A stretch of DNA of 64,000 bases, from positions 33,294,001-33,358,000 of the forward strand of contig CM097885.1 of assembly GCA_044892525.1 (NCBI GenBank), read 5' to 3'. Made by a program: the position numbers and the translations under genes. The first letter of the stretch is position 1, and the number at the start of each line of letters is the position of its first letter. The notes beneath the pieces are model-generated. The model searched no databases, was not told where the DNA came from, and worked only from the letters and a program-made list of their open reading frames with translations. This stretch comes from Schmidtea polychroa (taxonomy: Eukaryota). Of the stretch, positions 6,201 to 48,100 are shown one piece after another.

Positions 6201-9200
6201 AAACAAAATTAAGTATTAAGTGTTTTGAAGTTTTCACATTTCGTATCCTGAAATTTATTTTGTAACCAGAGGTAACATTTTTCGGAGGATGCGTTTCGTA
6301 ACCTGAAAATTTCGTTTGTAAGTAGAAGTACCACTGTATATGAATATTTAATATGTATTTCTGTGTTATTTAGTAATGTTATTCATTAGTGATAATTATT
6401 AATTATTATTTAGAAATTTCAATTTTATGGTTGATGGAAACAAGAAAACATTGGTAAAGCATTATTAATGTTAATTTGAATTACATTTTTTTAAATCAAA
6501 ATTTTTTCAACTTGATATGACACGGGTAGTGTCCACTTTTGAAATTTGTATTTAAAGAAGATATATTATATTGATAATAACAAAAATATGGTACTGATTT
6601 AACTATTTAAAAAAATAACTATAAAGATTTGTAAATATTTATTAGTTGTTTCCGTACTCAAGTTCTCGATCACTGTCATCTGAAGGGATTGATTAATTTT
6701 AAACATATGAGATTAAAGAATATTATGTATACAAAGAATGGTGAATTTGTAGTGTCATATTTGAAATGGTTCATGGAAAAATTAAAGTCAAAACTTTGTT
6801 AATATTAAAATGGAGTTATGTAAGAAAGTGAAAATTATTAAATTTTATTTATTTCAGCAAATCAACTAAAAGAATTGTAATTTATAAATAACTATAAATA
6901 ATTTGCAATTACTTGAAAAACAATTATCTAATGAGAACTGATGTTAGAATTAATATTTAAAAATAACACTATTTTTGTGAATTTATAAAATGAGACGATA
7001 ATGTATTTCCCGCTTCAAATTAATGTGAATTATAACATATATTCTTGGGAAAATTTAAATGTTAATAAATTGAATTGTTAGATCAAAAAAATATATTTCC
7101 TTTTTTATTAAAATAAATTCAGCATTTTGACTGATAAAATAATTTTTGATAAATTACATTTCCATTACTCGTCAACCGAAGACTATCTTATGAAAAATTA
7201 AGCTGAAGATTAGAAAAAGGAAATTCGTATTTTCGTTGAGTTAATAAAAGGTTCTAGTGGATTTGTCGACAAACTTTATCAATCGAGAATAACACATGTT
7301 ATCAGTGGAATTCATAGAGATTCTAAAAAACACAGGTTGATTTATTTAGTACATTAAAACACAAGTGTATGATGAAATTATTACTTTACATTAAAATCGA
7401 GCATTGAAAAAAAACTGTTATTTACGAGTGGAAAATCTTTTTATCCAGCAGATGGTCTTCATTGTTTACATTAAATTTTCAACGACAACTAAAATAAATG
7501 TTTTTTCACTTTAAATTTTCCCGGCCGGTGCGAAAAATTATCTTTATTTGATAAAATTTTTACAGATATTATCAACATAGATTAGAATTTTGAGAGAGAC
7601 ATTGAAAAGTAATGTGTCAAATTTTAGCGATGGATTTTGCAAATCTGAAATTTAGTTTAATTATTGTCAAGGGGTATTTTTATTATACCTAAAATCATTT
7701 AGTGAAAAATGTAATTTATCAGCATCCTCAATTTCCAAAAAATATTTTATGAGTTCAACTAAGAAATATCAAATTTTTATTCTTTTTTTTTATTTTTATT
7801 TTTTTTATAAAATGTAAGAAATGTAAGTACAAAGATCCAAATAATTGTTATTTCTTTTTTTAACAATTCGTAAAAATTCACTAAAATTAAAATGTTTTTT
7901 AAAGTCTGAAAATAGCCACTACCTTCGTTCAAAAATGATGTACTGATTAAAAAAATATGGATGAAGTTCTTTCTATGTCACAAAAACGAAGAAATTAATT
8001 ATTATTTATCAAAGCTTCGATAAATAATTAATAATTGGTATATCAACGAACAATTTTTTTTTAATTTGGAAACTTGAAAATGACGATGTATTATACTATG
8101 TCAGTAGATAGTGTTGACTCTAGCCAAATAGGATATCTCGAATCACACAAAAAATTACGTCATCGTGGTCGATTCAAAATCAAGGACTCTTTCATTTCTT
8201 TGCGCAGTAGCGTATCTAGGGCCGGGCAAGCGGGGCATTTGCCCCGGCGCCACGATTTTAGGGGCGCCAAATTGATTTTTGAAACCTAAACTTTATTTAA
8301 AGATTTTCGATTTTGAAATTTAACCAACATTAAAATAACGAATTTTGATTATTTGAAATATATAAACAAAGTTTTCCTGGAAAGCAGACGATAACTAATT
8401 CCTTTTGTAATATAATTTTAGTACTATTTAAATTAAATTTAAATTTTATGGTGAACTTTGTTTATATATTTCAAAGCCTTTCCAAAATACATGAAATTTG
8501 AGTTATATCCAGAACTCAATCGTAAGATTTATAGAATTATTTGTTAAGCTCAAAATTATTTGAAAAAACTTTCAAACTTTAGAATATCAAAGATGCCGAA
8601 ACCGAAATTAAGTGGCGCACAAAATCGTAAAAAGGCCAGAATATTCCGAAATGAAGCTAAAAAGTCAAGTCAAATGTTGCAAAATTATTTAAAAAAGGAA
8701 AAAGTTGAAGAAAATGACCAGATAGAGGATATTAAAGAAGACAAACATATGCCGCAGTCAGATTATGAATTTTTTGATTTTGATGCCTCACAAAACAATG
8801 AAGAGTCGGATTTTGATTATGAAATGACTGAATCCAACAATAGATCATGTCTTTCAACAATTTCAGAAAATATTCCGAATCTGCTTTTGTTCAATGATAT
8901 TGGATATTTGGAATTTCAAGAAGGTTTTCATTCATTCAGTCCAATAGTTTCACAAAAACTAAGAACTGAAGTCATTTTACGTGGCCCGAGTTTATTTCAA
9001 AATAATAAAGGAAGCTTTGCAGTGCATAATGGACGTTCAATTACATCATCATGGTTTAAGAAGAAGTTTGCAAACGGTATATATGTTAATCGATCTTGGT
9101 TAATTTATTCGCCTCATAAAGAAACACTTTTCTGCTTTGGTTGTTTGTTATTTTATAATGATTTTTGTAAAACTGCATTTTCTTCACCGGCTGGTTTTAG

Positions 9201-12200
9201 AGATTTTAAGCATTCAGAAAGAGTAAATGATCATGAAAATAATATTATACACCGTCAGAATTTTACAACATGGAAAGAAACTGAACGAAGATTGTCTCAA
9301 GGTGCTGGAATCGATATGGAAGTTCAAGCTCAAATATTGTTGGAAAAAGATCGATGGAGAGAAATTTTAAAAAGATTTCTTTCATGCATAAAATTCTTAG
9401 CATTTCATAATTTAGCATTACGTGGTTATAATGAAAATTTGTTGAATACAGAAGGCAATCCAGGTAATTTTCTGGGTCTCTTACAATTGATTGCGCAATA
9501 TGATCCACTTTTGGCAAGTCACATGGAACATTCTCGTTTACATCCAGGAACAACATCTTATTTATCACCAGGCATACAAAATGAGTTTATTCACCTTTTA
9601 GCTTCAATAGTTCGAAATGTTTTGATTGAAAATATTAAAAAAAGCAAATACTTTGGCATGATATTTGATTCTACTCCAGATTTACAACATCGTGAACAAT
9701 TTTCAGAAGTTATTCGTCACGTTGAAATAGATTTTGATAAAAAAACAGTGGAAATTAAGGAATCATTTCTGGGATTTATTGAGCTAGCTGAAAAAGATGC
9801 CGAAGCTCTTAAAAATACTATACTCAAATTATTACAAACTGATGGATTACAACTCTCGGACTGTCGATCGCAATGTTATGATAATGCGGCAGTTATGGCT
9901 GGTCATGTTTCTGGATTGCAACAAAGAATTACCAAATTGAACCCTCGCGCAGTGTTTATTAACTGTGATAATCAAAGTTTAAATCTTCTGTTCAAACTAA
10001 TCCCATAATGCTAACTTTTTTTGGTGTAATTGAACAAATTTATTTATTTTTTTCAAGATCAACCAATCTTTGGCAAAAGTTAACCGATGTCATTCCTTTG
10101 ACTGTAAAACGTGAATCAACAACACGATGGAGTGCACGAGCAGAAGCTGTAAAAGCAATTTTTATTGGAATCGATAATCTTGTGAAATTAATTGAAGATC
10201 TTTCTGATGATTTCAATCAAACATCTGACACAAGAAGCGAATCATACAATTTATTGCAAAATATATTGAATTTTAATTTTCTGGTTTTGATAAATTTTTG
10301 GCATCACGTTCTCGAGAAAATTGATCGTGTACAAAAATGAATGCAAGATCCAAAAATTAATTTTAAAGATGCCTCCGATGATTTACAAGGATTAAGCATA
10401 CATATACAGCAATTTCTTGAAGATCAATGCATTCAATCAATTGAAGCAGGTAAAAAAAAGTGTTTTGAATGGGGCGTTGAAATAAAGAAAAGAGTGTGAC
10501 GTATAAAAATTAGATTAGGTGAAAAAATGACTGATTCTGGTTTGACTGCTGAACAAGAGTTAGATCGTGTGTTGAAATGCTCAGTTGATAGATTAATTCA
10601 AGAATTAAAAACTCGATTTACTCGCCTTAATTCATTGAACGAAAATTTTGGATATTTCCTTGACACTGAAAATTTTCTAAATTGCCATGATCCTGCTAAA
10701 CGAACTATGCAATGAAGTTACTGACTGTAAAATGCTTCTTAATGCTCGAAAAGATGAAATTCCAAAATCACCTATAGATCTTTTAAAATTTTTAATATCT
10801 TATGGTGAAGATGTTTTCCCAAATTTAAGAATTTCATTGCAAATTATTTGACAATTGGTATTTCTGTTTCAACATGCGAACGTTCCTTTAGCAAATTAAA
10901 ATTAATTTTGTCATATCTTCGAGCAACAATGAGTGAAGAACGTTTAAATAATTTGGCATTATTAAGTATTGAGAAAAACACTGTGAACAAAATTAACTTT
11001 GATGATGTCATTGACAAGTTCGCAAGTGTTAAAGCACGAAAAATTTGTTTGTAAATTATTACAATAAATAAAGTTTAAAACTAACTTGTTGCAAAATTAA
11101 ATTAATTTTTTTTTAAACTGCTGCAAATCAATTTTAAAGAGTGAAAATTTTTGATTTTTTTTAAATAATAATTTTTTTTTCTTAAAAAAGAAATGTCACT
11201 TTAGTGCAAAAATAATATACCAATAATAAGGAAAAGAAAAAATTCACGTGGAGAGGGGCGCAATTTTAAGTTTTGCCCCGGGCGCCGTGAACCCTAGATA
11301 CGCCACTGTCTTTGCGATACCCCTCTATATTTTTTTAGATTTATGTTTATGTAATAATTTTTTATTTTATTTTAATAAATTTAATGGAAAAAATAATCAG
11401 TGGCGAAATTGGAAGAAATAAAAGTTCTTATATTAAGATTATATAATAATTTATTTTTGTGATTATCTGTGATTACATCAACTTTAATTTTTCTTTAATT
11501 GTTGATAATGTAATACCCTAAATATATTTCGCCTATCATTAGGTGACTACGTCATGGCCGTTTTGACTTATGTTTAAATGGAGTGGCAGCCATTTTCTAA
11601 ATTTTATTTTTGTTTTTCAGATAGTCTTAAAAGGCTCCAGATATTTTCAACGAGACATTAAATAGACAAATTTTAATTCTCCACGTTAGATTGAAATTAT
11701 AAAGTTGACACAGTAGATTAAAGAAACTTATAACTTTCTAAATTTAATATTAAAAATTAATAAAACACATTACTAAATAAACATTTATTAAAAAACTAGA
11801 GAAATTCGATCGTTATTTACTCTCCGAATTGGCGAAATCTATTTTAAATATCTATATATAGTCATTTAAACTAACTGATTACACTTCTAACATTTAAACT
11901 ATATATAAACCATAAAAATAGTATTTAAAAATATGAAAATTTTCCATGTAAAGTTTTATAAATGTATTTTTAAATGTCATCTTTTGACATTTTCCTTTTA
12001 ATATTATTATTTATCTATTAATAAATAATTTATTTTCTCAAATTATTGAAAAAATAACTCCATTTATTATGTAGAAAAATGAAAATTATTTAAATTATAT
12101 TCAAAATTAATTTTTTAGCAAATAATTAGATTTCGAAAAGAAAATTATTTTAAATATTGTAGTATTCTGAGAAATGTTTTACGAAAAATGTCTTACAAAC

Positions 12201-30200: not shown

Positions 30201-33200
30201 AGAATAACATTTAAGTATTTTATTAGAGAATGTATACAATATCTAGTTAATGTATACACTGTCTAAGTTTATACTTTAAATGTAACATACACTACATGCG
30301 TTTCTACTATTGGTCTACAGCAAATGCAGCATTGGAATATATAAAAGTAATGACATAATCTGAGGAGTCGGGCAATCAAAACAATCAATCAAACATGCAT
30401 ACATCCATGCATATTAATTATAAAAGTTAACATAACATAATATAATTAACATGGAAATCAAATATCCCAATACATTTACTTTAAATTTAACATTGATAAA
30501 AATTCATTATATAAAATTGCAACTTTTTTCCTTATTTAAATAGAAAAAGTTATTATATATTGACCTGTATCCTGACAATAAATATACGATGAAAAGGATT
30601 GTTAGAGATATTATCGTAAATTAATGTAAGCTGCAAAACAACTTTAAAATGATAGTCGTTCATCATATAATACGAGTATTTGCATTTATTCCTACAGATA
30701 AAAGTATACAACTTAATTTATTTTATATAATTTAGTCGTTTGATAAAGGTATTCTTAATAAAGGTTAAATTAATATTATAATTACTCTGATATTAAAAAT
30801 AAATTATTAATTTTTAATAAAACAAAAAATAAATTACTTTTCAATTTAATGTTGCAGAGGAATAAAACACCGATTTCACTTCCAATTACAAGATATTCAT
30901 TATCTGTCGGATTTAAACTACCACAAAGTATAGAAACACTTTTTGATAAACTTCCTCTATAACGTATAGATTTCGGTAAATCTCGAGCTGTCAAATTATA
31001 ACTGAAATATAATTAATAAAATTACTAGTTATAGTATAATATTATATATTTCTAAATATAAAAATATGATCAACTGTGAAAGTTTTACATATACGGAATA
31101 AAAGGAATAAATAAATATAAACCAATTATTCGTTATATATAATACGTTGAATTTATTTTATTTTTGAAAAGAATTTAATTATTTAACACAATTTTTCGGC
31201 ATAGCTTTTTACATCCATCGTAAATCGTAAGCTATTGAAAAATCACATTTAATAATTGGTAGAGGGCAATTTGGAAGAATATAATATGCAAAAATCATTG
31301 ATTGTTTGACAAAATAACAAAGATTTATAAATAAAATATGTAAAAATACGAAGTTTTAAAATTTTGAATTGAGAAAACAGAATTTTATGATTTTTTAGCA
31401 AAATATAATTTTAAAAATTAATGAATTAGTTTGTTTGAAAAAGAGCAAATCTAATGATGACAGTGAGTCTGTCGAAATATATTGTAGTTTAATATATATT
31501 GGATTCGCGNNNNNNNNNNNNNNNNNNNNNNNNNNNNNNNNNNNNNNNNNNNNNNNNNNNNNNNNNNNNNNNNNNNNNNNNNNNNNNNNNNNNNNNNNNN
31601 NNNNNNNNNNNNNNNNNNNNNNNNNNNNNNNNNNNNNNNNNNNNNNNNNNNNNNNTATATTAATAAATTCAATATATCTTAAATAATATTTATAAAAACA
31701 AATACTAATACTAACATATGAATCGAAAAGGATCTCAAATATTGTAAAAGAAATGTGAATTGCATACTTTTTTTAATTCAAAAAAGTGAACTTCCATTCA
31801 AAGTCACGAAAAAGTCATGGTACTCTTTGATATTAGAAAATAAATACAAAGTTAAATATTAAATGATTGATTGGCTTCAAAAATTTACAAATTTAATAAT
31901 TGTCTAAAGAAAATATACAAAAGCATGATGCCCATAAATTTAAACCTAATAAAACATCGTATTATATAAAATCTTAAATTTATTTATTCTAAACAATGCT
32001 TCAGTTTATAAATTAATTTAAAATAAATAGATTTTATAATATCAAAATAATTATTTTATTAGTCTTTAAATAAATATAATAGTATCATATGACCAGTTGG
32101 GATCTCAAATTTCAAAAGTAGAAATAACGGAACTTCATTGATAAAAATGTAAATAAACATTCAAAGAAATTATCATTTATTTAAGCTAGATAAATATGAT
32201 GAAAATGCAAAAATAGTTATCTTCAATCAATTATGGAGAAAAATTTAAATCATGTAGCGATTTAATCAAAAGAAAAAAAAGAAAAAAAATATTTATGTTA
32301 ATATAAAAAATATTTGTTATGATAAAAAAATCACTTGTTTGAATAATCAGTTTTTTTTAATTTTTATGCTAAAATACATATATAGTGATTTTGATATTTT
32401 TTAATAATTTATTATGAATTATATTATCAATGATTGGTTCACAGAATATTCCGATGGAAATATGTCTTCTCAAGGAGTATTTTAAATTAGAATAAAAATC
32501 TGGAAAATCTTGGCTTGCATTCCCTTATTAATATTACTTATGGCATTTTTTGTTCAATACCAATTATGTTGGCGATTTATTTCTACCCGATATTAACAGA
32601 AAAATTGGATTTTGGTCTGGAGATGTTTATAAATTACAATGCGATGCAATTGTTGTTCCAATCAATAATTCAGTCGAAGGCGAACTTTCCGTCGAATCTT
32701 CATTAATTTATAAATTTGCTGGAACTAAATATGCGCCTTTAATGCAAAATACCGTTTTTTCTCATGAAGCTGTAACACATTTCACAGATGTTTCAAGTAG
32801 TAATGAACAACAAAAACTAAACCGTATCATTCCGGTTTTCATGCCATTTATTGGATATATTATATCACTAATAATTGGAACTTTAATTGTTGTTCTCATG
32901 TCTATCGTTGGATTTTGCTTCTGTTTATGTCGACGTGGGGAGAAATGTGGTGGTAAAGTTAAAGTTCTATTAGGAATCATTTCTGTTATTATGTTAACTG
33001 GCATTGTTCTAACGTTTATCAAAATAAACTAATCCCTGACACGCTAACAAATCCAAAACTTATGCACCATTCTCTTTCTAATATTTACATTGAAATATCA
33101 AATGCAGAAAAGTTATCCAGAAACAATGATGGCCTGATAAATAAAACTCAGTTTCAAGATATGCTCAGCTGCCAATATTTTAATAATCTAAAAGCGGATT

Positions 33201-36084
33201 CTTTTAATGAAAAGGTCAAACAATGTCCTTCATCAATCAAGAAGGAGCAAACCACAACAAAATGATTTTACCAAAAAAAATTATTCGATTTTACATTTCA
33301 ATTCAATAAAAATAAATATAATAGATTTAATTTCAAACATCATCGATAATAAAATTATAAGAAAATTATTTAAAATTTATTTGAAATATAAATTATATTA
33401 AATTAATTAGGAAATTTGTCTAATCAATAAAAAAATATTTATGAAATTTATAACAAATCTGGAAAAATATTATTTGGCTTTTATAGTGTACGTGGAATGG
33501 TCAAATAAATTCGTGTTAAAACGGTTGCATCATTTATAAAACAATAACTTTCTATTTATTACGAAATACCAATCTCATTCCATGTGATCAGCAGATCTAA
33601 TTTAAAAGTACAGGTAACACCCGTTCACCGCGACCCTGGCGAGTGCGAATTCGTTATAACGCGACCGCAATTTAAAAAAATATTTTTCAGACACGCTTTG
33701 AGAGTGCGATAAATCGTCATAATGAGTGACACATAATGTTCTTGCTCACTTATACGCATTTAAATGTACATAGTAAGTCATGAGAGTGAGTGAGACAAAA
33801 TAACGTCACTACTTTGCTCTTAGTAGATACAATTTACATACATACAGTTGACCTAGTCTTAGTTGTGATAACAAACGCGTCTTAATTAATTAAATTGATT
33901 ACATAATGATTTTTGAGCAATTTGTAATTTTTAAAATGTCAAAAAGATAAAGTGATAAATCGGTTAAGAAAACTCGCAAAGTATTGACCTTGGAAAAGAA
34001 ATTAAAAATTATTGAAATGACAGAAAATGGTGCTAAATGTACAGCTGTAGGAAGTGATTTAAATTTGGCCGAGTCTAAAGTGCGAACAATTGTGGGACAA
34101 AAAGATAAAATTAAAAAGGCTGGTGAGAGTGTTACTCCATTTACAGGGACGAAAGTTTCACGAACCAGAAGTTTTTTGATGACGGAAATGGAGAATTTAT
34201 TAAGCAAATGGATAGAGGATCTGAATCAAAGGCTATTAATACTCAAATCATAATGACTAAATCACTTAGTCTTTGGGATCATTTAAAATCTCAACATGAA
34301 GGAGATAAAATATTTAAAGCAAAGGTTGGTTTGATCGGTTTAGAAAACGATCAAACTTGCATAATCTTAAAATGATTGGTGAATCGGCTAGGGCTGACAT
34401 GGAATCTGCTGAAAAATATCCAATTGAGTTCCGGAAAATTGTGGAAAGGGGAAATTATTCAACAGATTTAATTTTTAATGTGGATGAAACTGGACTTTAT
34501 TGGAAACAAATGCCGTCGAGTACATTGATTTCCATAGATGAGAAGACTGCTTCTGGGTTTAAAGCATCTAAAGACCGTTTGTCTATTAACAATTTGTGGG
34601 TCTAAATATAATTGCGAACAATTTTAAAACCTACGAAATACAAACCAAATTTGGCATAGTTATGTTGTAGAAGAAGGTTCAAACCCGAAAATCACACTAG
34701 ATTTACTTTTTAAATACCTAATATATTTTATGAATTTTATTGTTTTTATTTTGAATTAATAAAAATTCAGTTCATTATTTTATTATGGCTCCACAATATT
34801 GTATTTTGAACTTTTTTATAGTTTTTTCTCTTAGGTTGAAAAAGGTTTCTAGCCATTGGTTTATCTTATGCAAGACTACCTTGACTTTCGATGCCACTGG
34901 AATTGATCAGCTACGTGTTATTGTCAAAAACAAATTCCAGAAAACTTATTAAACAAAGAAAATTTATTAAAGAAAACTTATTAAAAATTCAGACGAAGAT
35001 CTCAGTTTGGTTTGTAATTTATTCATTTGAGAGCACAACAAGAGTTGAGAAATATAGAACGAAAGAACAATTGCGAGATGAAATCAAGCGCAGTATTGAT
35101 GAGAATTTCAACAATTCGCATATCATAGTTTATCAAATAGACTGGAAATGCATGGTTGTTAGATTATCTTGAAAAAGACGAACAGCCGTTAACATCAGAC
35201 AAAGAATCAAGTCTAATTGAAATATGTTAACTGATGAAAGTCCAGTTGGACGACATGCAACTCATCACCATCAACAAATCCCTCACTCGAATACATCTGA
35301 TTCCACTGTATTAGTTTGGTCCAATAAAGAAGCAACGGAAATTTAGAAGGCCGAAACAATATATCAGTAAAATCTATAGCAATCGAGGATTCTATTTAAG
35401 TAATGAGTGTAGTATTAGTTGAAAGAAACATCAGCAGAGGGGTTGACAAATCATTCGCAAGCGTAAAAAGAGAAAATTATCAAACCTGTAGCACAGCAGA
35501 ACACCAATACAAAATAAAATAAAATTGCACTCTCCTTTGAAAACCAAGTAAGTGTTCCATTCCAATTGCACTTAGAAAAAACTAATATCAAAAACTGGGT
35601 TATTATTGAAGTGCATGGCATGGTGGGCTAATATGGATAATTACGTGGATTCATTTGTGAGAAATTATATCGATAGGAAAAGAAAGTTAATATTGAAAGT
35701 GTAAGGCAATCACGGGAGCGGGATGGGAAACCATTTGATCACATCCATTTGTACTGAACATTTATAAAAATTCAAATATTCAGATATATTTTGATGAAAT
35801 AATTCTTGTGTATCTTTTATATTGGAATTTTATTTTATGTAAAAATAATATTCAGAATAAAATTCAGAACTTGGCTGTTTGTCATATGAAATCATTCAAT
35901 ATTAATAATAAAAGTCATAAATACTATTTGACGTGTAGACTTCTAAATATGATTTACAACCAGAAAATTCTGCTGCCATAATTTATAGTTTTTCAACAAA
36001 TTATTTGATGACTTTACTTTTAAGATTTTATTCCGAGAAATAAATATTGAAAAATTAAAAGTAAGTATGAAATAGAATAATAAC

Positions 36085-36163
<79 letters not shown>

Positions 36164-39100
36164 TTAATAATAATTAGAGCTTCCAAAATTACTGTATATC
36201 CGATTAACGGTAATACCGAAATCATTTTCCATCATTACCGATATTTCAGGAAAAAATTTATTGCAGTATTTTTGTTTGAAAAGTTTTTGATATAAATATA
36301 GACCAGCATTTTTCAATTTTTGTTTTCATTGTTCCACCAGCTAAACAAATTAAATGTTTGCTTAGCACTAGCAAAAGTCAGAAAAAAATCAACAAGCTTA
36401 TCTTCAAACAGGATATGTTTAGTATTGAAATGGCGCTGGAGTATAGGTTTCATTGAATGATTGAAAAGTTTTTATTGCAGATGACACATTGGAATGTGGG
36501 TTCATTTTCATCACCACGACCATGTAGATCCAAAGGATAGATACCTATCGTAAGATTCGTTATAGACAAGTTCTTGTTTTATTTTAAGTTTCAACCATTG
36601 ATGCTTTTTGTGTTTTCAAATTATAATAATATATAATGAATTATAATTTATTAAAGTAATGTAGTTTTTGTAATGTAAGTATATAATTTGTATATATTTT
36701 GTTTTCTTTTAAATCCATTTAATACATATAATGACGACCTTTGCGTTTCAAAAGAGCTCACTGATGCTTGCAAGTCTTAATTTGTAACGAGTTTGTTGTT
36801 AGTTGAATTTGCCGTGTTTTTGACAATAATTTTAAGCACCACTCTTAGAAGAATTTTTATTATCAGAACAATCTTTATAGGTTTTACCATTTTAGAATTA
36901 TCAAAACTTCAAATGTATGAAACCTATTATGATATTCTACTACCACATTTTAAAAATAGAATATCAATGCATGCAATGGATACAGATAGTATATTTTTAA
37001 AAATATATACTAAAAACCTAAAAGAGGAAATATCTGAAAATGAAATCCCAAGGAATTTAATAAATTCATCTGGAGAATTATTCACCTTTAAAGATGAAAA
37101 ACCAAATACTCCAATAATTGATGCTGTATTTATTAGAGCCAAACAATATTCACTAGAAATGATTGAAGCCCCAAAGACTGAAACCCATTCAATTAGGATT
37201 GGGGATATAGACTATACATTTGATATACCAGTATTAAAACTTGTAACGTCTAAAGATAATAAAAATAAAGGTATACAGAAAGCAGTTTCTAGAACTATAC
37301 CCCATCAAGACTATAAGGATATTCTAAATAAAAATCAACCAGATAAAATAGTTGAGGTTCATCAACTTAAATCTGAAAAGCATTACATGTATTTAGAAGA
37401 ATCAAATAAAATATCATTATCAAATTATGATGATAAGAGGTATATTTTATCAGATTTAAAAAAGACTTCCAATTGGAAATGATATGATTCCACATATAAA
37501 AAATTTAAAAGTCTTGAATGATTTATATCATACAAACATAACAGACCTTCAACTGTATCAAGTTCAAATACTCTACCCTGAAAGTCATTCTGAAACTCGA
37601 AATATTTTAGACTCTATAACCATATACGTCAAGTATTTAAATACTAATCCATCAGAAGAAGAATTTGAATCTCATAGATTAGAGATTCAAAGATTATCAG
37701 CCATCAATGACTGAAAGTCTCTGAAAGTCATTCTGGAATCTTAAAAATGACTGAAAAATCAATACTTGAAAACTTAAAGTCTTTAACTGACGACAAGATA
37801 CTTTTAATTGATATTATCAAAGTTTTGCATAAATTAAAAAATAAACCATCTGTTTCAATAATAAAAATTTTTTCTTTTATATTTATAACATCTTTTTTAT
37901 TTGCTCTTTTATTTTCTCTTGCTCTACCTTGGTTGAAGTCTTTCTGGCTTTAATCTCTTTAGATATTTTCATCAACTGAACCTCAAGATCATTTATAATC
38001 CAAAGTAATACAGGCTCTCGAATAGCAAGTTGCGCAGCTTGCAGGGCTTTATCCTCTGAAGATTTCTCATTATATTCTTTTAATGCAAGACTTGATTCCT
38101 TTTTAATAATAGGATTGCTTTTTATCAAGTTTAAAACACGTTCATTCATTTATTAAAGTTTTTATTTTCTTCTCTCCATTTGCTAAATAACAAGGTCTGG
38201 GGTCCGGAAGTCAAAGGCTGTTGATCTAAAATATCTTCAACATCTTCAGTCGTAGAGACTTCTATCCCGGAGGCTAAAGGATCTTTCTTTTGCCTTTTAT
38301 ATTTCTTAGACTTGATGCAGTTATGATTTTGTTGAAGTACATTAGTTGAACAATCATTACAATAAACACCCTTTTTCTCTATAGCCTTCTTTCTCTTACC
38401 TGTATGCCTATAGGGAGAATCAATTCCTAAATCTTTTCTAATTCTTCTCATCGTCGAGTCTGAAGTACCAATCATTTTACAAATTTGAGTCTGAGAAAAA
38501 GTAGGGTTTTCACTCTTTAATCTTGCAAATTCAAAGACTTTCTCTTTTTGTTGAATCTTGTTTAATTATTGAAAGCTGTTCAATTTTTTTTATAAAGCCA
38601 TCCATTTTTATAGTTGAGGAAATAAAGCAAAATAATATTCTCCTTTTCCAATTTGGTCTTGTATACTTAAAGATTGAAATTTAGTTATTTTATTTAAATA
38701 ATCAGGGTCATTAATTCTTACAAGATAAAAGATGTAACACTTTTCACATATTCTAATTTTATCCTCAAGTGATAAACTTCTAAAATCATTCAACCTAGAT
38801 TTCATTATTTCTTCCATTTTTTAAATTAAAAATTATACAGTCTTACGAAGTCTTACGTCGAAGTCTTACGTCGAAGTCTTACGAAGTAACAATTTCTCTC
38901 GGTATTGTTTTTTATCTTCTTTAACCTTTGTGGTTTTCAACTTTATAACTTCATTTTTAATATCTTGAATTATTTGATTTGATTTCATTATTTCTTCATC
39001 TGTTAGGATTCCATCTTCCAAGGCTTTTAATTGAAATAAAAATAATTTTGATATCCCCAAGTCTATTGTCAAACAAGCTTCACGATATAAACTTTTCTTT

Positions 39101-42100: not shown

Positions 42101-45100
42101 TTTTCTTGTCTATTAATTTAACATCATTTTATTTATTTCAAATTGTAAACGAAGTACTAATCAATTTGTTTTTAAAATATCTGTTTTGATTTTCAATTAA
42201 ACTTCATTAATTATCTCGCATTTTGTGGGAAAACAACGTATTTTTGTCCACTAGGTCGCACGATTACATGTCCCATATCTTCAGAACTGTTTGTCAAATT
42301 TTACTAAGTTCATTTCACATTATTTACTATCATACCGTGTTTTGCTTCAGAAATAAATACCGGAATATATACAGCAATCTTAATACAAAAGATAAGTAGG
42401 TTGATGGAAAACTGAAAGTTCAAGTAGGATTTTCCTTGAAATAAAATGCAGAATTTTACTGGTAAGTAGAACAACTGAAGAACAAATTTTGATGATTTCT
42501 ATAATTGATGTATTGTCTTATTTTTTTGTCTTTTCGTTTAATTTTTATGGAATAGATCAGTAATGAGGATTAGCAGTCCCTTCGGGTCGTTGACAAATGT
42601 TTAAGGGTATATATTAAAAATGGACGTTAGGCGACGAAGGAACAAATTATCTTCAATAAAATCTCCTAAAAATATTTTGACTAAGATTAAATATTTTTTC
42701 TACTTAATATATTTAAAGTAAGGTTGTTAAACGAAAATCGAAAAGTCTATTTTCTGGTTTGAAAATGGTAATCAATTTACCAAAAACCGATATTAACAAT
42801 TCTAAGTAGAAAGTAAACAATTTGGTATTGACACTGTTTTACGTGTTCGCATTATATTATAATATGTTTCTATGAAATACATTAAGAATCGATAATAGGT
42901 TTAAAGTCGAATTAATTATTAACAACCCAGATTAATTTAAAAATGTAAAAAATTTCCATTTTAATGGAAAAAACTACTACATGTGTCAATATTTATGAAT
43001 TTCAAAATTATCATACCCTTTTTCACAGAAAATCTTCCATAGAAATCAAATGTTAATTGGAAATTTTAGTTGGACAACGAGTTATTTTAACACTCAAGTA
43101 CTTTGGCTGCACCGCAGCGGCTATTTTAAATTTAAACATAATAGAATGCATTTATTGTAAATGGATTTAATTTTTTTTCTTAGGTGAAGAAATATAAAAG
43201 TTCTTTTTTCATGTTCTTTTTATCTGCATTGAACTTATACTATCGCAGCTGCGGCGAAAGGAAAGTGTTGGTGTGACAAATTTTATTTAAGTATTAAAGG
43301 GTTAAGATCAAGGAAATTTTTGTGTCTGATTTTTGTGTTTTATTTTTTTAATTTAAATTGTGATCAAATCTACGGAAATTTGTTATAAAGTAAAAGCTCA
43401 TTATTGGATAAAAAATTCAAAAATGGTGTTATTTTATTAAAATAATATTAATAAGAAAAACTTCAAGTAATTTATTTTCAAAAAAATGCATTTTTATAAT
43501 AATATTTGGTATAATTTTTGTATAATATAGAATCTATATTATAGATTTTAACAACTGTTGTTCATTCTGTTGGACCTTAAGGCACAAAATGTTGGGATAT
43601 TTTTTATCCGGCTTTTAAAAAGTGTTCAAATAAAATTAGTTTTTCGATGAAATGTCGATTACTGATATGTTACAGTATGAAAGAAACACCTATTATAATG
43701 AAAGGCGAGTAATCTTGCTTCCTTTTATATACGTATGCTAGGAAGCAAATATCCTGTTTTCGCATAACATAAATCAATTTTAAACATAAAATTTTTCTTA
43801 CGAAAATCCGTGTTCAAAAACGGATGTTAGTCGCAAAAAGGTTATGTATCACCAAAATAGATGAACAGGTAACATGTTAATAAATAAATTCGTAAATTAT
43901 TGATACATGACATTAATTTTAAATAAAAACTTTAAAATTTAGTTTCAATATTTTTGTAAACCTCAGAAATTGTCTCTCTTCTATTTTCTTCTCAGAATAA
44001 TGGACATATTATATATAGATAAAATAAATTTTGAGGTACTGCAAATCATTATAATCTTACAAATGGAAGTAAAATACTATCAATAATTGAACCATACAAT
44101 AAAAACTGAAATTATGAAAAAAGATAATAAGAAGAAGCAATTATAAACAAAATAAGTGTAAAAGTGATTTTGTCGTATGACTTACCGTATTTTAGCGCAT
44201 ATAACGCGCACGTTATACGCATTTTTACAAACCGTGCACCCCCCATGCGCGGTATCTGTGGGTGCGCGCTTTATGATTTATATTTTACACGTGGCGGCAT
44301 TGCCAGTGGAAATATTTTTATGATGTGACAGTAACCCTACCATCGGTTTTATTGTTTATTGTAATCAGATACCGTGCGCGTTATATGCGCTAAAATACGG
44401 TACAAAAAATTAAACAGCATAAGCTTTGTGATACCCAGTGCAAGTCTCAATAGTAGAATAGTTTCAAAATTTTGGCTCTCATCAGCATTATGCAGAAGAC
44501 GTGAATAAAGAGTGAAATTATATGAAAGAAAACTAGAATTAAAATTTCTGTTAGCTATTAATAAAGGTGAGTTTTTGTAATTTTTTGAAATAAAGGTTTT
44601 CTGAAATTTTTCGACTTTCGGTTTCTATTCTGAATTGCTGTTACTGAACATTGTTTTGGTTTCTGGAATTTTGATATTGAAAAATAAATCCTTTTCTGAG
44701 TTTTTTCTTAATTTAATTATGAATCAAATTGAAGTTAGTGAACATGTTCAAGGGTTTAACTCAAAGAATGGATACGGGGATTCATTAGTGTTGACAATAA
44801 AAGTAATGATAAAGAAGTTCTTGTTCATTTTAAATCGATTGCTGCTACAAATGAAACTTCAAATCATGAATCAAGAAATGTTACTGATCCAGATGGAGGC
44901 GATATTGATGATAATATTTAGTCTATGAAAGGTAATTAAACTTTGAAATACACGTTTGTAACACGGCATTGAAACAAATTTGGATGATATGAAAAGTATC
45001 AGACGCTTTACAATGAAAAGGAAATTGCGCCGCTGAATCTCAAAGCTGACAAAAGATCCATGAATCAAATTATTTTGGAGACATTTAATGCACCAATGAT

Positions 45101-48100
45101 GTATTGTTAAAAATCAAACAGTTCTTTTTTGTACGAATCAGGTCATACCTCGGGTATCGTTCTGGACTCTACTGACCTTGAATCTCGCACTATGGCAATT
45201 TATGAAAGTTATGGAAAACCTTCAAAGGATGCCTCGATGATGGCAACTAAACATATCCCAAGAATTAACTATTGCAATTATATCGGGAAACTCAGAACTC
45301 CAGAAGGAGTATAATTCAAGCCAAGTTCCTCGTCTTGTAAAGATTGACATAAGGCATTTTCCATAAACTTCAAACTCTGTTTCACGCATCTTGCTTTTGA
45401 CTGTGGCTGTTTTCACCCTTGCAATAAGCTCATCGACTTCCTTGAAATTCATTTTTATCTTTAGAACGCAATTGTACAATGTTATCAAGAGAAAGAAGGC
45501 GAAAAAACTTGGGATAAAAATTCTTTAGCATTTTAACAGCTGAAATCATGTAGGCAGCAGCTTTTTATATCAAGAGCAGATTTTGATTTCGATTTGCTAC
45601 AATATTTCTGATAGTTTCATTTATGAGCTGAGATATAATAGGATCATTTAGAGAACTTACGATTGGTACAGTCAAGCAAATAAGTTTATGGAGAGTCAGC
45701 TAACAGTCCTGCCAATATGTTTACACATTTCATACCATTTATATCAGACTCGCCTACCACAAGGAAAATGTTTTTGTCTCTGAGGATTGATTGTACTTTC
45801 TCTAACTTATTTCAGCAAAATATTTTCTCAATGAATGATGATATGGTTTATAAAGTGGAATATTTGCAGCGATAAAAGCTTTAGTAACTTTGGTTGAAAT
45901 TCTCAAGTGGTTGCTGATTATAAATAAGTGTTGCTGCTCTTTTGTGATTTAAATTGTTTCTGTGATTATTTGCAGAAAATTTGCGCTCACAAGAGACATT
46001 AGTTCGGCCATATATACACCAGAAAGTTAATAAAAATTGAAATCATGAACTGTGTCGGGTGCTAAACATAAGTGGCAGATTTTGTTCCTTCGCTTAGCTA
46101 TGCCTTTGACATGCTTTAGATAAAAATGGAATTCATATTAAAATTTAAAATTACTGAGTAAGAAATCAAATTTAAACAAAATCAATAATGAAATCGAAAC
46201 AAAGATAAATTGAAAAGAAATCAGTGGTGAAAATTGAGAAAAGTTGTTATAAAAATAAGAATTGTTTAAATCAAAACAAAGAAAATGCTAAACTTAATGT
46301 AATGTTTGACTTTTTTCCTTTTAAAAATAATCTTAAAGGAGAAAGATCATTGACAAAAGAGAAACTTCATGAACTTAGTGTAAAAAAATTAACTTAGTAG
46401 TAAATTATTAACTTTTAGCTAAAGTTGCATTTATGAACTTTTCTGTTGAAAGTTGCAAAGTTGCAATTAAAAATATCAATAAATAGACATCTTATTGAAT
46501 AAAAAGCTTTTAAATAAATGTAGGTTGCCAAAAGTTGCAATGATTACTAAAGATTGTTTTCTCTTATACACCGACGAGCAATTAATAGGACTTTTTCTGA
46601 CATTTAATAGCACTCTATCAATTGATTTAAGGCTTTTTAATGTAAATTTTTTAATGAAAATCAATTGATTTTTTTAATTAAATTTTAAAAATACTGAAAT
46701 TATGCATAAAAAATGTAAGAAAATTTATCTTACATATTTCGATGGCTTGCTCTATATGAAATAGTTTAGTGGTTCCTAATGTGGTGGTTGTGGACCGAAA
46801 TCGGTCCGCCGATTACTGATCACTGGTCTGTGGAAGAGTCAAAATTTAATTTTAATTATCAACTTTTTTTTAAATGGGTAAATTATTTGAATGTTGCTTA
46901 ATGAAAATTGATTAAAAATTACTTAAGATCAACCCTCTCACAAGAGCGATTATCTAATCCGTCAATTATATCTATTGAACTGATATAGTGCAATAAATAG
47001 ATTTTAATGATTTAATTTATGATTTTGCAAGGAAAAAAGCAAGAAAAACACAATTTAAATAAATTTATGATGTTTAGGGACAAAAACAATTGAAAGAATA
47101 ATGATTTTGTGTTTATTTATTAAGACTGGTACCAAACTTTAAAAATGAAAGAACAGGAGCTTCAGAACTATCGTATATGCATGGTAAGTTTATTTTATAT
47201 TAAAGGGACGCCCAATTTCAAAATTTTGCGCAGGGCCATCAAAAATTCATAATAGTGATAAAATTATTTATAATTCTTCACAAAATTATGTGAAAATTGA
47301 TAATAATTATTATAAAATTACCAACCAATTTAATGGAACAAGTGTAGATTTTCTCATTGAAAGATTCCACATGACGATTGTACCATCATTCCCCATGGAC
47401 ACTAAACAGTAATTCGATGAGATCGTTTTTCCAGAAACATTTGACCACAATATTGAATTTATAGGTTCTTCGTGCACCTTATTTTCACTACTACTTGCTA
47501 AAATTAAATCATTTTCTGTTCTTGACCTATCCCAAACTATGATTTCTCCTAAAAATATCACGTTAACAGCACTTCAATTAAACTAGTTTAAATAGATATG
47601 TTTGTAAAAAATTATTGGCAGTTTAAAAAAATGTAAATTTATAAGATTTAAAAGTGGGCATTTTAATAATACTTAAATAAACACGGTAAAGATTTTATTA
47701 ATAAAATTCGCCATTCGTACATCTTTATCACTATATATTTCGCTAGCATCATCACTATCATTGTTTCAAAATCGTGCAAAGTACGTAGTATGTTTGCTAG
47801 TAAATCTCAAACGCCGGTTGGATTGTGTTCGGATTTCGTTTATCAATTCACATGTAATGGGTGTAATGCCACATACATTGGAGAGACTTCCCGTCATCTC
47901 TACTCGAGTTCAAGAACACTGTCGACCGAAGGGAGTGTCCAATATTAAGGATCATAATAAAGTCTGTATGAGAAAATTAGGAATGTCTGATTTTAAAATT
48001 TTATCAAAAAATTTTGATAATTGCTTTGAGCGTGTGATATGTGAAGCATTTTTAATCCTAAAATCAATGTGCAGAATGCTGTAAATGCGTGTGTGTTGAA

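What the first reader, a model, noticed from the sequence alone, without database searches (positions are those of the whole stretch)
32550..33032. In-frame fusion of a macro-domain fragment to a prominin transmembrane fragment
One 160-codon open frame joins two unrelated host proteins. First comes the start of a GDAP2-like macro domain (to ..YKFAG), then a prominin segment with TM1, the CFCLCRR..CGG loop and TM2, lacking the usual cytoplasmic linker. There are no introns or TE termini at the junction. I know of no such fusion. It looks like template switching between two mRNAs, and the frame is still open.
Basis: partly seen in the sequence, partly recalled or inferred. Interest (0 to 1): 0.7.

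Follow-up and report, generated by a model that had tools for sequence, protein, structure and literature searches.

The report
Host-exon mosaic inside a solo LTR
The open frame is real, but it is a decaying relic inside one copy of a 1-kb retrotransposon long terminal repeat that occurs well over a hundred times in this genome and carries spliced pieces of several host genes, most likely stitched together by reverse-transcriptase template switching; it is not a unique host fusion gene.

Summary
The 160-codon frame at 32550-33032 exists, and both halves come from host genes. The macro piece matches spliced exons 1-2 of a GDAP2-like gene on C3 (about 94% identity). The prominin piece matches four spliced exons of a prominin gene on C4 and is colinear with that gene's mRNA contig.

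The frame is not a stand-alone fusion. It sits inside a 1007-bp repeat (32253-33259) with TG..CA ends. Of 21 complete copies, 14 have perfect 5-bp target duplications. Other copies abut a tRNA-complementary primer site or an integrase. I read it as a solo LTR.

The cargo has four host sources, not two:
- an epoxide-hydrolase membrane anchor
- the GDAP2-like piece
- a 26-nt nitrilase-like remnant
- the prominin piece

Sister LTR subtypes swap in nitrilase, PDZ or epoxide-hydrolase pieces. Every junction seen keeps the native frame. Two junctions lie in microhomology.

Copies drift neutrally (dN/dS about 0.9). The window copy has lost the start codon and is shifted out of frame at both ends.

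The mechanism, LTR-mediated retroposition, is published. Cargo inside the LTR itself, this much amplification and modular swapping are unusual.

Other unchecked first-reader notes in this genome describe similar in-frame chimeras inside LTRs or transposons.

The parts
32253..33259 (+). Solo LTR, 1007 bp. It starts TGTAGCG.. and ends ..CCACAACA, matching the family termini TGTAGTGAGTT.. and ..AAACTACGACA.
   Evidence: The ends are sharp in alignments of more than 20 copies. The repeat spans 32253-33263. No internal retrotransposon sequence was found elsewhere in the window.
32248..32252 (.). Left flank of the LTR (AATCA). The right flank at 33260-33264 is AAATG. This is a degraded target-site duplication: 2 of 5 bases match, or 4 of 5 if offset by one A.
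   Evidence: In the family, 14 of 21 complete copies have perfect 5-bp duplications and 3 have 4 of 5.
32253..32444 (+). The LTR's own 5' region, A/T-rich with a TATA-like motif near 32380. The boundary with the cargo is approximate.
   Evidence: Types B, C and D of the family share it. Type A has a different 190-bp 5' region with the same first 11 bases.
32445..32593 (+). Piece derived from an epoxide-hydrolase mRNA: 5'UTR plus the N-terminal membrane anchor, up to ..LFLPD. The family start codon reads ATA in this copy. One extra T lies near 32546-32551.
   Evidence: In type D copies the same frame runs on into a Pfam EHN hit (E=1.6e-16; E=1.2e-13). A 1480-nt contig from a run guessed to be RNA matches 32547-32593 at 100% and continues as type D does. 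Alignment.
32585..32593 (+). Junction between the epoxide-hydrolase and GDAP2-like pieces, inside 9 nt shared by both parents (ACCCGATAT).
   Evidence: Sequences compared. The module boundaries overlap.
32594..32736 (+). GDAP2-like macro-domain gene. The end of exon 1 runs to 32614 and most of exon 2 covers 32615-32736. The 50-nt intron is absent.
   Evidence: blastn to the parent at C3:77045217-77045424 gives 94.7% and 93.5% identity. Parent sequence with its GT..AG intron is. The parent's next exon hits Pfam Macro positions 38-89.
32737..32762 (+). Remnant of a nitrilase-like (CN-hydrolase, NIT2-like) coding start (..LMQNTVFS). Relative to types A and B, a 45-nt GT..AG-bounded piece is missing just upstream.
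   Evidence: Homology to type B copies runs to 32771. In L019 the same frame continues into Pfam CN_hydrolase (E=3.7e-13) and PDZ (E=1.5e-5) hits. Alignment.
32761..33220 (+). Prominin mRNA piece covering four spliced exons, with junctions near 32796/7, 32834/5 and 32995/6. It holds TM1, the Cys-rich loop, TM2 and the start of the first extracellular loop. A 45-nt piece is missing at about 32964 and a 42-nt piece at 33056/7, both GT..AG-bounded. One base is missing near 33022.
   Evidence: Parent exons lie at C4:22865823-22870915. Transcript contigs of 1.5-2.4 kb are colinear with 32761-33220 (40 of 462 bases differ), carry the two extra pieces, and diverge from the LTR outside this range. Pfam Prominin hit.
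33221..33259 (+). The LTR's own 3' end, shared by all subtypes and retained in a 69-bp deletion derivative.
32550..33032 (+). It is the middle part of a family frame of about 290 codons. The frame at 33062-33265 is its shifted continuation.
   Evidence: L004 has 293 open codons through the whole cargo. Frame breaks are shown.

Best explanation
Window 32253-33259 is a solo LTR of an LTR retrotransposon with the domain order PR-...-IN, so of Ty3/gypsy or BEL/Pao type.

About 780 of its 1007 bp are not retrotransposon sequence. They are a mosaic of spliced host mRNA pieces, in this order:
1. an epoxide-hydrolase 5' end
2. GDAP2-like exons 1-2
3. a stub of a nitrilase-like gene
4. four prominin exons

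Inferred history: the mosaic was built stepwise during reverse transcription. The enzyme switched from the element's RNA to co-packaged host or chimeric RNAs at short homologies. At least one join was made by splicing. The changed LTR was then copied to both ends and amplified. Later rounds swapped modules, giving subtypes A to E, and spliced out three GT..AG mini-segments. LTR-LTR recombination then left solo LTRs.

The long open frame is inherited from the host coding pieces. In the copies examined it decays neutrally. In the window copy the start codon is lost and the frame is broken on both sides, so the 160-codon ORF most likely makes no functional protein.
For: The unit is an LTR:
- TG..CA termini are sharp in more than 20 copies.
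- 5-bp target duplications are perfect in 14 of 21 complete copies and 4 of 5 in 3 more. The three copies with 1 of 5 are exactly those that abut a primer-binding site (L064, L034) or an integrase plus purine tract (L004).
- Four genome sites have the LTR end, one base, then TGGTATCAGAAG.. or up to 31 nt complementary to a tRNA 3' end.
- L068 carries gag-like zinc knuckles and a protease-like ORF downstream. The same protease sequence is joined to a truncated LTR in L020.
- An integrase lies upstream of L004's LTR: rve_3 at E=5.9e-5, and Atlas rve clusters at score 0.94.
- Protease hits lie near other LTR copies.

The cargo is host-derived:
- Parent genes with introns were found in the same genome.
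- The prominin mRNA contig is colinear with 32761-33220.
- Pfam hits to Prominin, CN_hydrolase, PDZ and EHN all lie within the family's open frames.

The joins were made at RNA level:
- Introns are precisely removed.
- The GDAP2 exon 2 donor is joined exactly to the next module in types A and B.
- Microhomology at junctions: 9 nt at one, and 2 nt plus a 6-nt block at another.
- Three internal losses are GT..AG-bounded.

Amplification and decay:
- At least 49 loci carry the tail module, 94 matches hit the nitrilase/PDZ modules and 132 hit the epoxide-hydrolase module.
- Pairwise dN/dS averages 0.93 among type C copies and about 0.8 among types A and B.
- Frame breaks in the window copy are shown.

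The mechanism matches published LTR-mediated retroposition (PMC5131818).
Against: - No element with two matching LTRs was recovered. Coordinate lists show no second LTR within 10 kb of the copies that abut PBS or integrase.
- The window copy's own target duplication is imperfect.
- Pfam did not recognise the gag or protease ORFs, so the superfamily is not assigned.
- If the cargo lies in U3, only about 39 bp would remain for R plus U5. Where transcription starts and ends in this LTR is unknown.
- The uniformly in-frame junctions are not predicted by passive capture.
Confidence: 0.85

Rival explanations
1. The LTR-borne mosaic frame is, or was, a working accessory gene of the retrotransposon. 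It would encode a membrane-anchored protein, in the way MMTV sag and HIV nef are coded in LTR sequence. An open frame would then have been selected whenever modules were swapped.
For: - All six junction types between host coding pieces keep the native frame on both sides. By chance this is about (1/3)^6.
- The three internal losses are 45, 45 and 42 nt, all multiples of three.
- Many copies of several subtypes keep 200-349 open codons in 27% GC DNA.
- A contig from a run guessed to be RNA runs through a type D LTR end into its flank.
Against: - dN/dS among copies is about 0.8-0.9.
- The cargo holds only domain fragments: about a third of a macro domain and two of prominin's five TM segments.
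- No stop codon is conserved at the LTR end, and no consistent continuation into gag is seen.
- No transcript covers 32594-32760 in four runs.
- The two prominin losses may be natural exitrons of the host gene.
Confidence: 0.1
2. The 1-kb unit is not an LTR. It is a complete non-autonomous chimeric retro-element of the kind Tan et al. describe: only the outer ends of the two LTRs survive, the cargo replaces everything between them, and the unit is inserted as a whole.
For: - Most copies are single units with target duplications.
- No two-LTR element was found.
- The native ends are short, about 190 bp and 39 bp.
- The published cases have this layout (PMC5131818).
Against: - Cargo-bearing units sit in the 5' LTR position, followed at one base by a PBS and leader (L067 and L069, type D).
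- A cargo-bearing unit sits in the 3' LTR position, preceded by integrase and a purine tract (L004, type C).
- These same copies lack target duplications.
- A truncated type C unit is fused to the element's protease (L020).
Confidence: 0.07
3. A one-off host retrogene or fusion gene made by template switching between two mRNAs.
For: Spliced exons lie in one open frame.
Against: - Dozens of copies at 87-94% identity lie on all four chromosomes, with shared termini and target duplications.
- Four parents contribute, not two.
- The window copy lacks a start codon and is frame-shifted.
- No such protein is in public collections.
Confidence: 0.02
4. DNA-level capture by a Pack-type TIR element or a Helitron, or LINE-mediated processed pseudogenes.
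For: The variable left extents in the first blast looked like 5' truncation.
Against: - Introns are removed.
- There is no poly(A), no long TIR, and no 5'-TC..CTRR-3' ends. The target duplication is a fixed 5 bp.
- PBS and integrase lie adjacent to some copies.
Confidence: 0.01

Closest known systems
LTR-mediated retroposition in animals (Tan et al. 2016, Genome Res, PMC5131818)
   Same: - Partial, intron-less mRNA copies are joined to LTR-retrotransposon sequence at microsimilarities.
- Chimeras can combine two to four parental genes. A mouse 'Super' retrocopy is one example.
- Parental frames are often kept.
- The chimeras undergo secondary retroposition as non-autonomous elements.
   Different: - In the published cases the cargo replaces internal ORFs between the LTRs. 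Here it lies within the LTR itself.
- The published cases have one to a few copies. Here well over a hundred LTR copies exist, in at least five modular subtypes.
Maize Bs1 (Elrouby and Bureau, as cited in PMC5131818 and PMC13317346)
   Same: [quoted passage not shown]
   Different: - The Bs1 cargo is internal and one piece is out of frame.
- Bs1 has 1-5 copies.
- It is in a plant.
Foreign sequence inside LTRs: Cassandra TRIMs with 5S rDNA in their LTRs (bioRxiv 10.1101/2023.07.14.548913, abstract only); BARE-2 and Veju (PMC13317346)
   Same: Host or foreign sequence is carried within the LTR and is propagated with it. In BARE-2 and Veju this is attributed to abnormal template switching.
   Different: In those cases the cargo is a promoter-bearing RNA gene or another transposon's sequence. 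It is not a multi-gene protein-coding mosaic with a long open frame.
ORFs coded in LTR sequence: MMTV sag, HIV/SIV nef (from my own knowledge, not tested here)
   Same: An open reading frame lies in or overlaps an LTR.
   Different: Those are conserved, functional viral genes. Here there are only domain fragments drifting neutrally.
Retroviral oncogene capture (own knowledge; mechanism cited in PMC5131818)
   Same: Host mRNA is taken up by read-through or co-packaging plus non-homologous template switches.
   Different: Oncogene cargo is internal and usually a single gene.

Membership tests
LTR of an LTR retrotransposon (solo LTR) | TG..CA termini forming a short inverted repeat | tested here: met
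   The family ends are TGTAGTG.. and ..ACGACA in more than 20 copies. The window copy has TGTAGCG.. and ..CAACA.
LTR of an LTR retrotransposon (solo LTR) | 4-6 bp target-site duplication flanking solo copies | tested here: met
   For the family, 14 of 21 copies are perfect at 5 of 5 and 3 have 4 of 5. The window copy itself matches only 2 of 5, or 4 of 5 with a one-base offset.
LTR of an LTR retrotransposon (solo LTR) | Primer-binding site complementary to a tRNA 3' end next to the 5' LTR | tested here: met
   Four loci show it. In L069, 31 nt read as the complement of a tRNA T-arm plus acceptor end. Identification as tRNA-Leu is from memory only.
LTR of an LTR retrotransposon (solo LTR) | gag/pol between LTRs, and a purine tract before the 3' LTR | tested here: inconclusive
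   An integrase fragment and ..GGGGGCTGA lie before L004's LTR. Gag-like knuckles and a protease-like ORF follow L068's LTR remnant, but Pfam does not recognise them.
LTR of an LTR retrotransposon (solo LTR) | Two like LTRs flanking one element | tested here: inconclusive
   None was found within 8-10 kb in L067-L069 or in the coordinate lists. Further DNA could not be fetched.
LTR-mediated retroposition chimera (Tan et al. 2016) | Intron-less partial mRNA copies, microsimilarity at switch points, several parents, secondary retroposition | tested here: met
   Searches show introns removed. Junctions have 9 nt, and 2 nt plus 6 nt, of microhomology. At least five parental genes contribute across subtypes. 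There are many copies with target duplications.
Prominin (PF05478) | Pfam score over the cut-off and the five-TM architecture | tested here: not met
   The score is 33.4 bits against a cut-off of 34.3. Only model positions 72-143 of 799 are covered, that is TM1, the loop and TM2. The piece derives from a prominin gene but is not a prominin.
Macro domain (PF01661) / GDAP2 | Pfam Macro hit; GDAP2 additionally has a CRAL-TRIO domain | tested here: not met
   The 60-aa piece gets no Macro hit. Only the parent's next exon, which is absent from the LTR, hits Macro positions 38-89. The parent's CRAL-TRIO part was not examined. The resemblance to GDAP2 is from memory.
Pack-type TIR element / Helitron / LINE-processed pseudogene | Long TIRs with a 2-10 bp target duplication; 5'-TC..CTRR-3' ends with no duplication; poly(A) with a variable duplication | tested here: not met

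The most novel reading that the evidence does not exclude
An LTR-retrotransposon lineage uses its LTR as a cassette in which spliced host exons are repeatedly swapped. Only in-frame assemblies spread. This would imply that the LTR-borne frame is translated and matters to the element, either as an accessory membrane-anchored protein or as a translated leader. It would also mean that this genome holds a general, TE-driven exon-shuffling system. Other unchecked first-reader notes report in-frame chimeras in other LTRs or transposons of this genome.
Probability: 0.1. Interest if true: 0.7.

Novelty: new variant of a known kind. Interest (0 to 1): 0.4.

Why it matters
This removes a false lead: the locus is not a new host macro-prominin fusion protein.

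It also documents a clear animal example of LTR-mediated exon shuffling. Parent genes, spliced junctions, microhomologies and successive module swaps can all be read directly from one genome.

The cargo lies inside the LTR and has been amplified to well over a hundred copies. If the in-frame rule holds up, the family could show whether translation or a protein product filters which captured sequences a retrotransposon can carry.

For annotation, such LTRs will seed spurious chimeric gene models and false domain hits (Prominin, CN_hydrolase, PDZ, EHN) across this genome.

Tried and rejected
- Pfam on the 60-aa macro piece gave no Macro hit. I traced its origin through the parent gene instead.
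- An exhaustive representative search with the 293-aa family frame returned one 63-aa hit at E=8e-5. A word-indexed homologue search returned none. An exact-product look-up returned none. So the frame is not an annotated protein in those collections.
- Variable left ends in the first blast suggested LINE-like 5' truncation. I rejected this once the alignments showed a sharp common 5' end and different internal modules.
- I checked for CACTA, Transib and Helitron termini by eye. None fit.
- I considered that the LTR frame continues into Gag, as in Ty1. I rejected it because the frame stops 20-47 codons past the LTR end, inconsistently between copies, and gag lies about 700 bp further on.
- I searched for a two-LTR element. 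Three 10-kb loci next to PBS-bearing copies held no second LTR.
- The dN/dS tests for selection came out near neutral.
- Read data: four runs guessed to be RNA gave no contig over 32594-32760. Expression of the window's own frame is therefore unsupported, though this does not prove it is silent.
- The high-identity parents of the nitrilase, PDZ and epoxide-hydrolase modules could not be picked out among more than 90 and more than 130 matches.
Full report
**1. Observation**

The frame at 32550-33032 (+) is present. It has 160 codons from the first TTG and 166 codons stop to stop. The window is 27% G+C, and a stop is expected at 8.5% of codons. About 0.008 frames of this length are expected per window, and the longest frame in 50 shuffles was 154 codons. 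So the frame reflects a coding origin.

Pfam finds Prominin in residues 79-138 (E=1.8e-8, 33.4 bits, just under the 34.3 cut-off; model positions 72-143). It finds nothing convincing in the first 60 residues.

**2. The frame lies in a repeat**

An 801-bp query around the ORF finds at least 12 near-full copies at 87-94% identity on all four large chromosomes, and more than 50 partial matches. With a 12-kb query the shared block is window 32283-33263 only.

Aligning the ends of more than 20 copies gives sharp termini:
- The 5' end reads TGTAGTGAGTTAATC.. The window copy has TGTAGCGATTTAATC starting at 32253.
- The 3' end reads ..GGAGCAAACTACGACA. The window copy ends ..CAAACCACAACA at 33259.

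**3. The repeat is an LTR**

I took a census of 21 distinct complete copies:
- 14 have perfect 5-bp target-site duplications, and 3 more match at 4 of 5.
- The three copies with essentially no duplication are the ones attached to internal retrotransposon sequence. L064/L067 and L034 are followed, after one base, by TGGTATCAGAAG.. L004 is preceded by an integrase ORF and ..GGGGGCTGA.

Further support:
- A pattern search finds four genome sites with the LTR end followed by this primer-binding sequence. In L069 it extends to 31 nt that read as the complement of a tRNA T-arm and acceptor end.
- L068 has a 69-bp deletion derivative made of only the two LTR ends, then the primer site and a shared leader. 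A Penelope-like insertion follows (RVT_1 E=1.2e-10, GIY-YIG). After that come ORFs with CxYHxxxGxxAxxC knuckles and a protease-like ORF.
- The same protease sequence is fused to a truncated LTR in L020. Weaker copies of it lie 1.5-10 kb from other LTR copies, including 3.4 kb upstream of L004's LTR.
- The ORF upstream of L004's LTR is an integrase core fragment (rve_3 E=5.9e-5, rve E=8.5e-4; Atlas rve clusters at 0.94).

The order protease ... integrase ... LTR fits a Ty3/gypsy- or BEL/Pao-type element. The superfamily was not resolved, because Pfam is silent on the gag and protease ORFs.

The window holds no internal sequence of the element, so its copy is a solo LTR. Its own flanks match poorly: AATCA against AAATG, or 4 of 5 if offset by one A.

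**4. What the LTR carries**

Only about 190 bp at the 5' end and 39 bp at the 3' end are the element's own. The rest maps to host genes of the same genome.

(a) 32594-32736, GDAP2-like gene.
- It is 93.5-94.7% identical to the end of exon 1 and most of exon 2 of a gene at C3:77045100. The 50-nt GT..AG intron between them is absent.
- The parent's next exon, 6 kb downstream, hits Pfam Macro positions 38-89.
- The likeness to GDAP2 itself rests on my memory of the human sequence. The CRAL-TRIO part was not examined.

(b) 32761-33220, prominin gene at C4:22865823-22870915.
- Four exons are joined with introns of about 50 bp, 3.2 kb and 1.3 kb removed.
- Contigs of 1.5-2.4 kb in three runs guessed to be RNA are colinear with exactly this range (40 of 462 bases differ).
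- Before 32761 they carry the upstream prominin exon sequence. After 33220 they diverge from the LTR.
- These contigs and the gene contain two pieces that the LTR lacks: 45 nt at about 32964, which is the 'missing cytoplasmic linker', and 42 nt at 33056/7. Both begin GT and end AG. Some sister copies (L003, L010, L016) still have the 42-nt piece.

(c) 32737-32762, nitrilase-like stub.
- In subtypes A and B the same sequence continues into a Pfam CN_hydrolase hit (E=3.7e-13), followed by a PDZ hit (E=1.5e-5), all in one 293-codon frame (L019).

(d) About 32445-32593, epoxide-hydrolase piece.
- It is the 5'UTR and membrane anchor of an epoxide hydrolase.
- In subtype D the same frame runs on into Pfam EHN (E=1.6e-16 in L032, 1.2e-13 in L067).
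- A 1480-nt contig matches 32547-32593 perfectly and then continues as subtype D does.

**5. Junctions**

- Epoxide hydrolase to GDAP2: inside 9 nt common to both parents (ACCCGATAT, 32585-32593).
- Nitrilase to prominin: at a shared CT (32761-32762), with a further identical GAAGCT 3 nt on.
- In subtypes A and B the GDAP2 part ends exactly at the exon 2 splice donor (..GTTAATG|gtatgt in the gene) and is followed by the nitrilase module. That join looks made by splicing.
- The window subtype lacks 45 nt spanning that join. The lost piece again begins GT and ends AG.
- In subtype A the GDAP2 part starts within about 40 nt upstream of the gene's ATG. This suggests, but does not show, that copying ran to the mRNA's 5' end before returning to the element.

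**6. Subtypes seen**

| Subtype | Cargo order | Example loci |
|---|---|---|
| A | GDAP2 (from its 5'UTR) - nitrilase - PDZ | L043-L047 |
| B | epoxide-hydrolase anchor - GDAP2 - nitrilase - PDZ | L019, L018, L015 |
| C | as B, but nitrilase cut short and prominin in place of the rest | window, L002-L010, L016, L030 |
| D | a longer epoxide-hydrolase piece joined to the last 116 bp of the prominin piece | L031-L042, L067 |
| E | GDAP2 followed by the epoxide-hydrolase 5'UTR and coding start | L049, L050 |

Module searches give 49, 94 and 132 matches. They also hint at further subtypes with extra sequence between the nitrilase and PDZ modules and open frames up to 349 codons. The nesting (D keeps 9 nt shared with GDAP2 and a prominin tail) implies serial replacement or recombination between subtypes.

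**7. State of the window copy**

Relative to sister copies:
- The family's ATG reads ATA. L004 shares this.
- There is a one-base length difference in a T run near 32546-32551.
- There is another one-base length difference near 33022.

The 160-codon ORF is the stretch between the two frame breaks. The ORF at 33062-33265 is the shifted continuation.

**8. Selection**

Pairwise dN/dS among 12 type C copies averages 0.93, with a median of 0.85. Among types A and B it ranges from 0.6 to 1.5, mean about 0.8. Copies carry 0-4 stops in the family frame. This is what neutral decay of young copies predicts.

One thing is unexplained. All six kinds of junction between host coding pieces keep the native frame on both sides, and the three internal losses are multiples of three. 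For the two prominin losses, natural exitrons of the host gene would explain this. For the junctions, chance is about 0.1%. The sample of subtypes is small, and this observation was made post hoc.

**9. Mechanism**

Shown:
- The cargo is spliced-mRNA-derived and multi-parental.
- Microhomology lies at two joins.
- One join is at a splice donor.
- The cargo lies inside units that occupy LTR positions.
- The units are amplified and carry target duplications.

Inferred:
- Template switching by reverse transcriptase between the element's RNA and co-packaged host or chimeric RNAs.
- Copying of the altered LTR to both ends.
- Splicing of the element's RNA to remove the GT..AG pieces.
- LTR-LTR recombination leaving solo LTRs.

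This is the published LTR-mediated retroposition model (PMC5131818; review PMC13317346).

**10. Comparison and novelty**

Multi-gene chimeras, in-frame cargo and secondary retroposition are known, for example the Drosophila and mouse cases and maize Bs1 (PMC5131818). Foreign sequence inside LTRs is also known: Cassandra 5S (bioRxiv 10.1101/2023.07.14.548913), and BARE-2 and Veju (PMC13317346).

I did not find described the combination seen here: a protein-coding mosaic of about 780 bp from several host genes within the LTR, amplified to well over a hundred copies, with modular subtypes. My literature searches were limited.

Other first-reader notes on this genome, all unchecked, report in-frame host-fragment chimeras inside LTRs or transposons (s1-223943, s1-207997, s1-217352). 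One lies at 44719-45215 of this window (s1-198589). The phenomenon may therefore be genome-wide.

**11. Verdict**

The locus itself is a dead solo LTR. The family is a new variant of a known kind.

Noticed in passing
window 33609-34584: Degenerate pogo/Tigger-like transposon next to the LTR. The ORF at 33984-34250 hits CENP-B_N (E=7.8e-6), and copies at 90% identity lie elsewhere in the genome (C4:46801347, C2:64181143).
   Followed up: partly
window 36861-39000 and beyond: High-copy repeat with at least 30 copies at 80-97% identity. Its 229-aa ORF at 36793-37479 has no Pfam hit.
   Followed up: no
window 44719-45215: A first-reader note (s1-198589) reports a cold-shock-domain fragment joined to an actin fragment. 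This may be another LTR-mediated chimeric retro-cassette. I did not check its termini or copy number.
   Followed up: no
window 8560-10005: A 482-aa ORF with DUF4371 (E=1.1e-19).
   Followed up: no
window about 31510-31650: A run of N (masked or an assembly gap) about 600 bp upstream of the LTR. I left it untouched.
   Followed up: no
L068:2127-3986 (G000:C1:253854626-253856485): A Penelope-like element (RVT_1 plus GIY-YIG) is inserted into the leader of the LTR element, just after a 69-bp LTR derivative that keeps only the two LTR ends.
   Followed up: partly
L034:2622-2725 / L063 (G000:C1:45143373-45143600): Two LTR 3' ends face each other in inverted orientation. They are separated by only about 20 nt that begin with the primer-binding sequence. 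The origin of this arrangement is unexplained.
   Followed up: no
G000, many loci: A related LTR-retrotransposon family has a protease 55% identical to this element's. It has more than 60 near-identical hits inside 1129-aa open frames, which looks like recent amplification.
   Followed up: no
L068:4218-4619: An ORF in the element's leader region has a weak ubiquitin-like hit (E=0.015). It may be another captured host piece.
   Followed up: no
L061:5218-5267 (G000:C3:77045255-77045304): The GDAP2-like gene's first intron is only 50 nt. Very short introns in this genome make the 42-45-nt GT..AG losses in the LTR cargo plausible as splicing events.
   Followed up: partly
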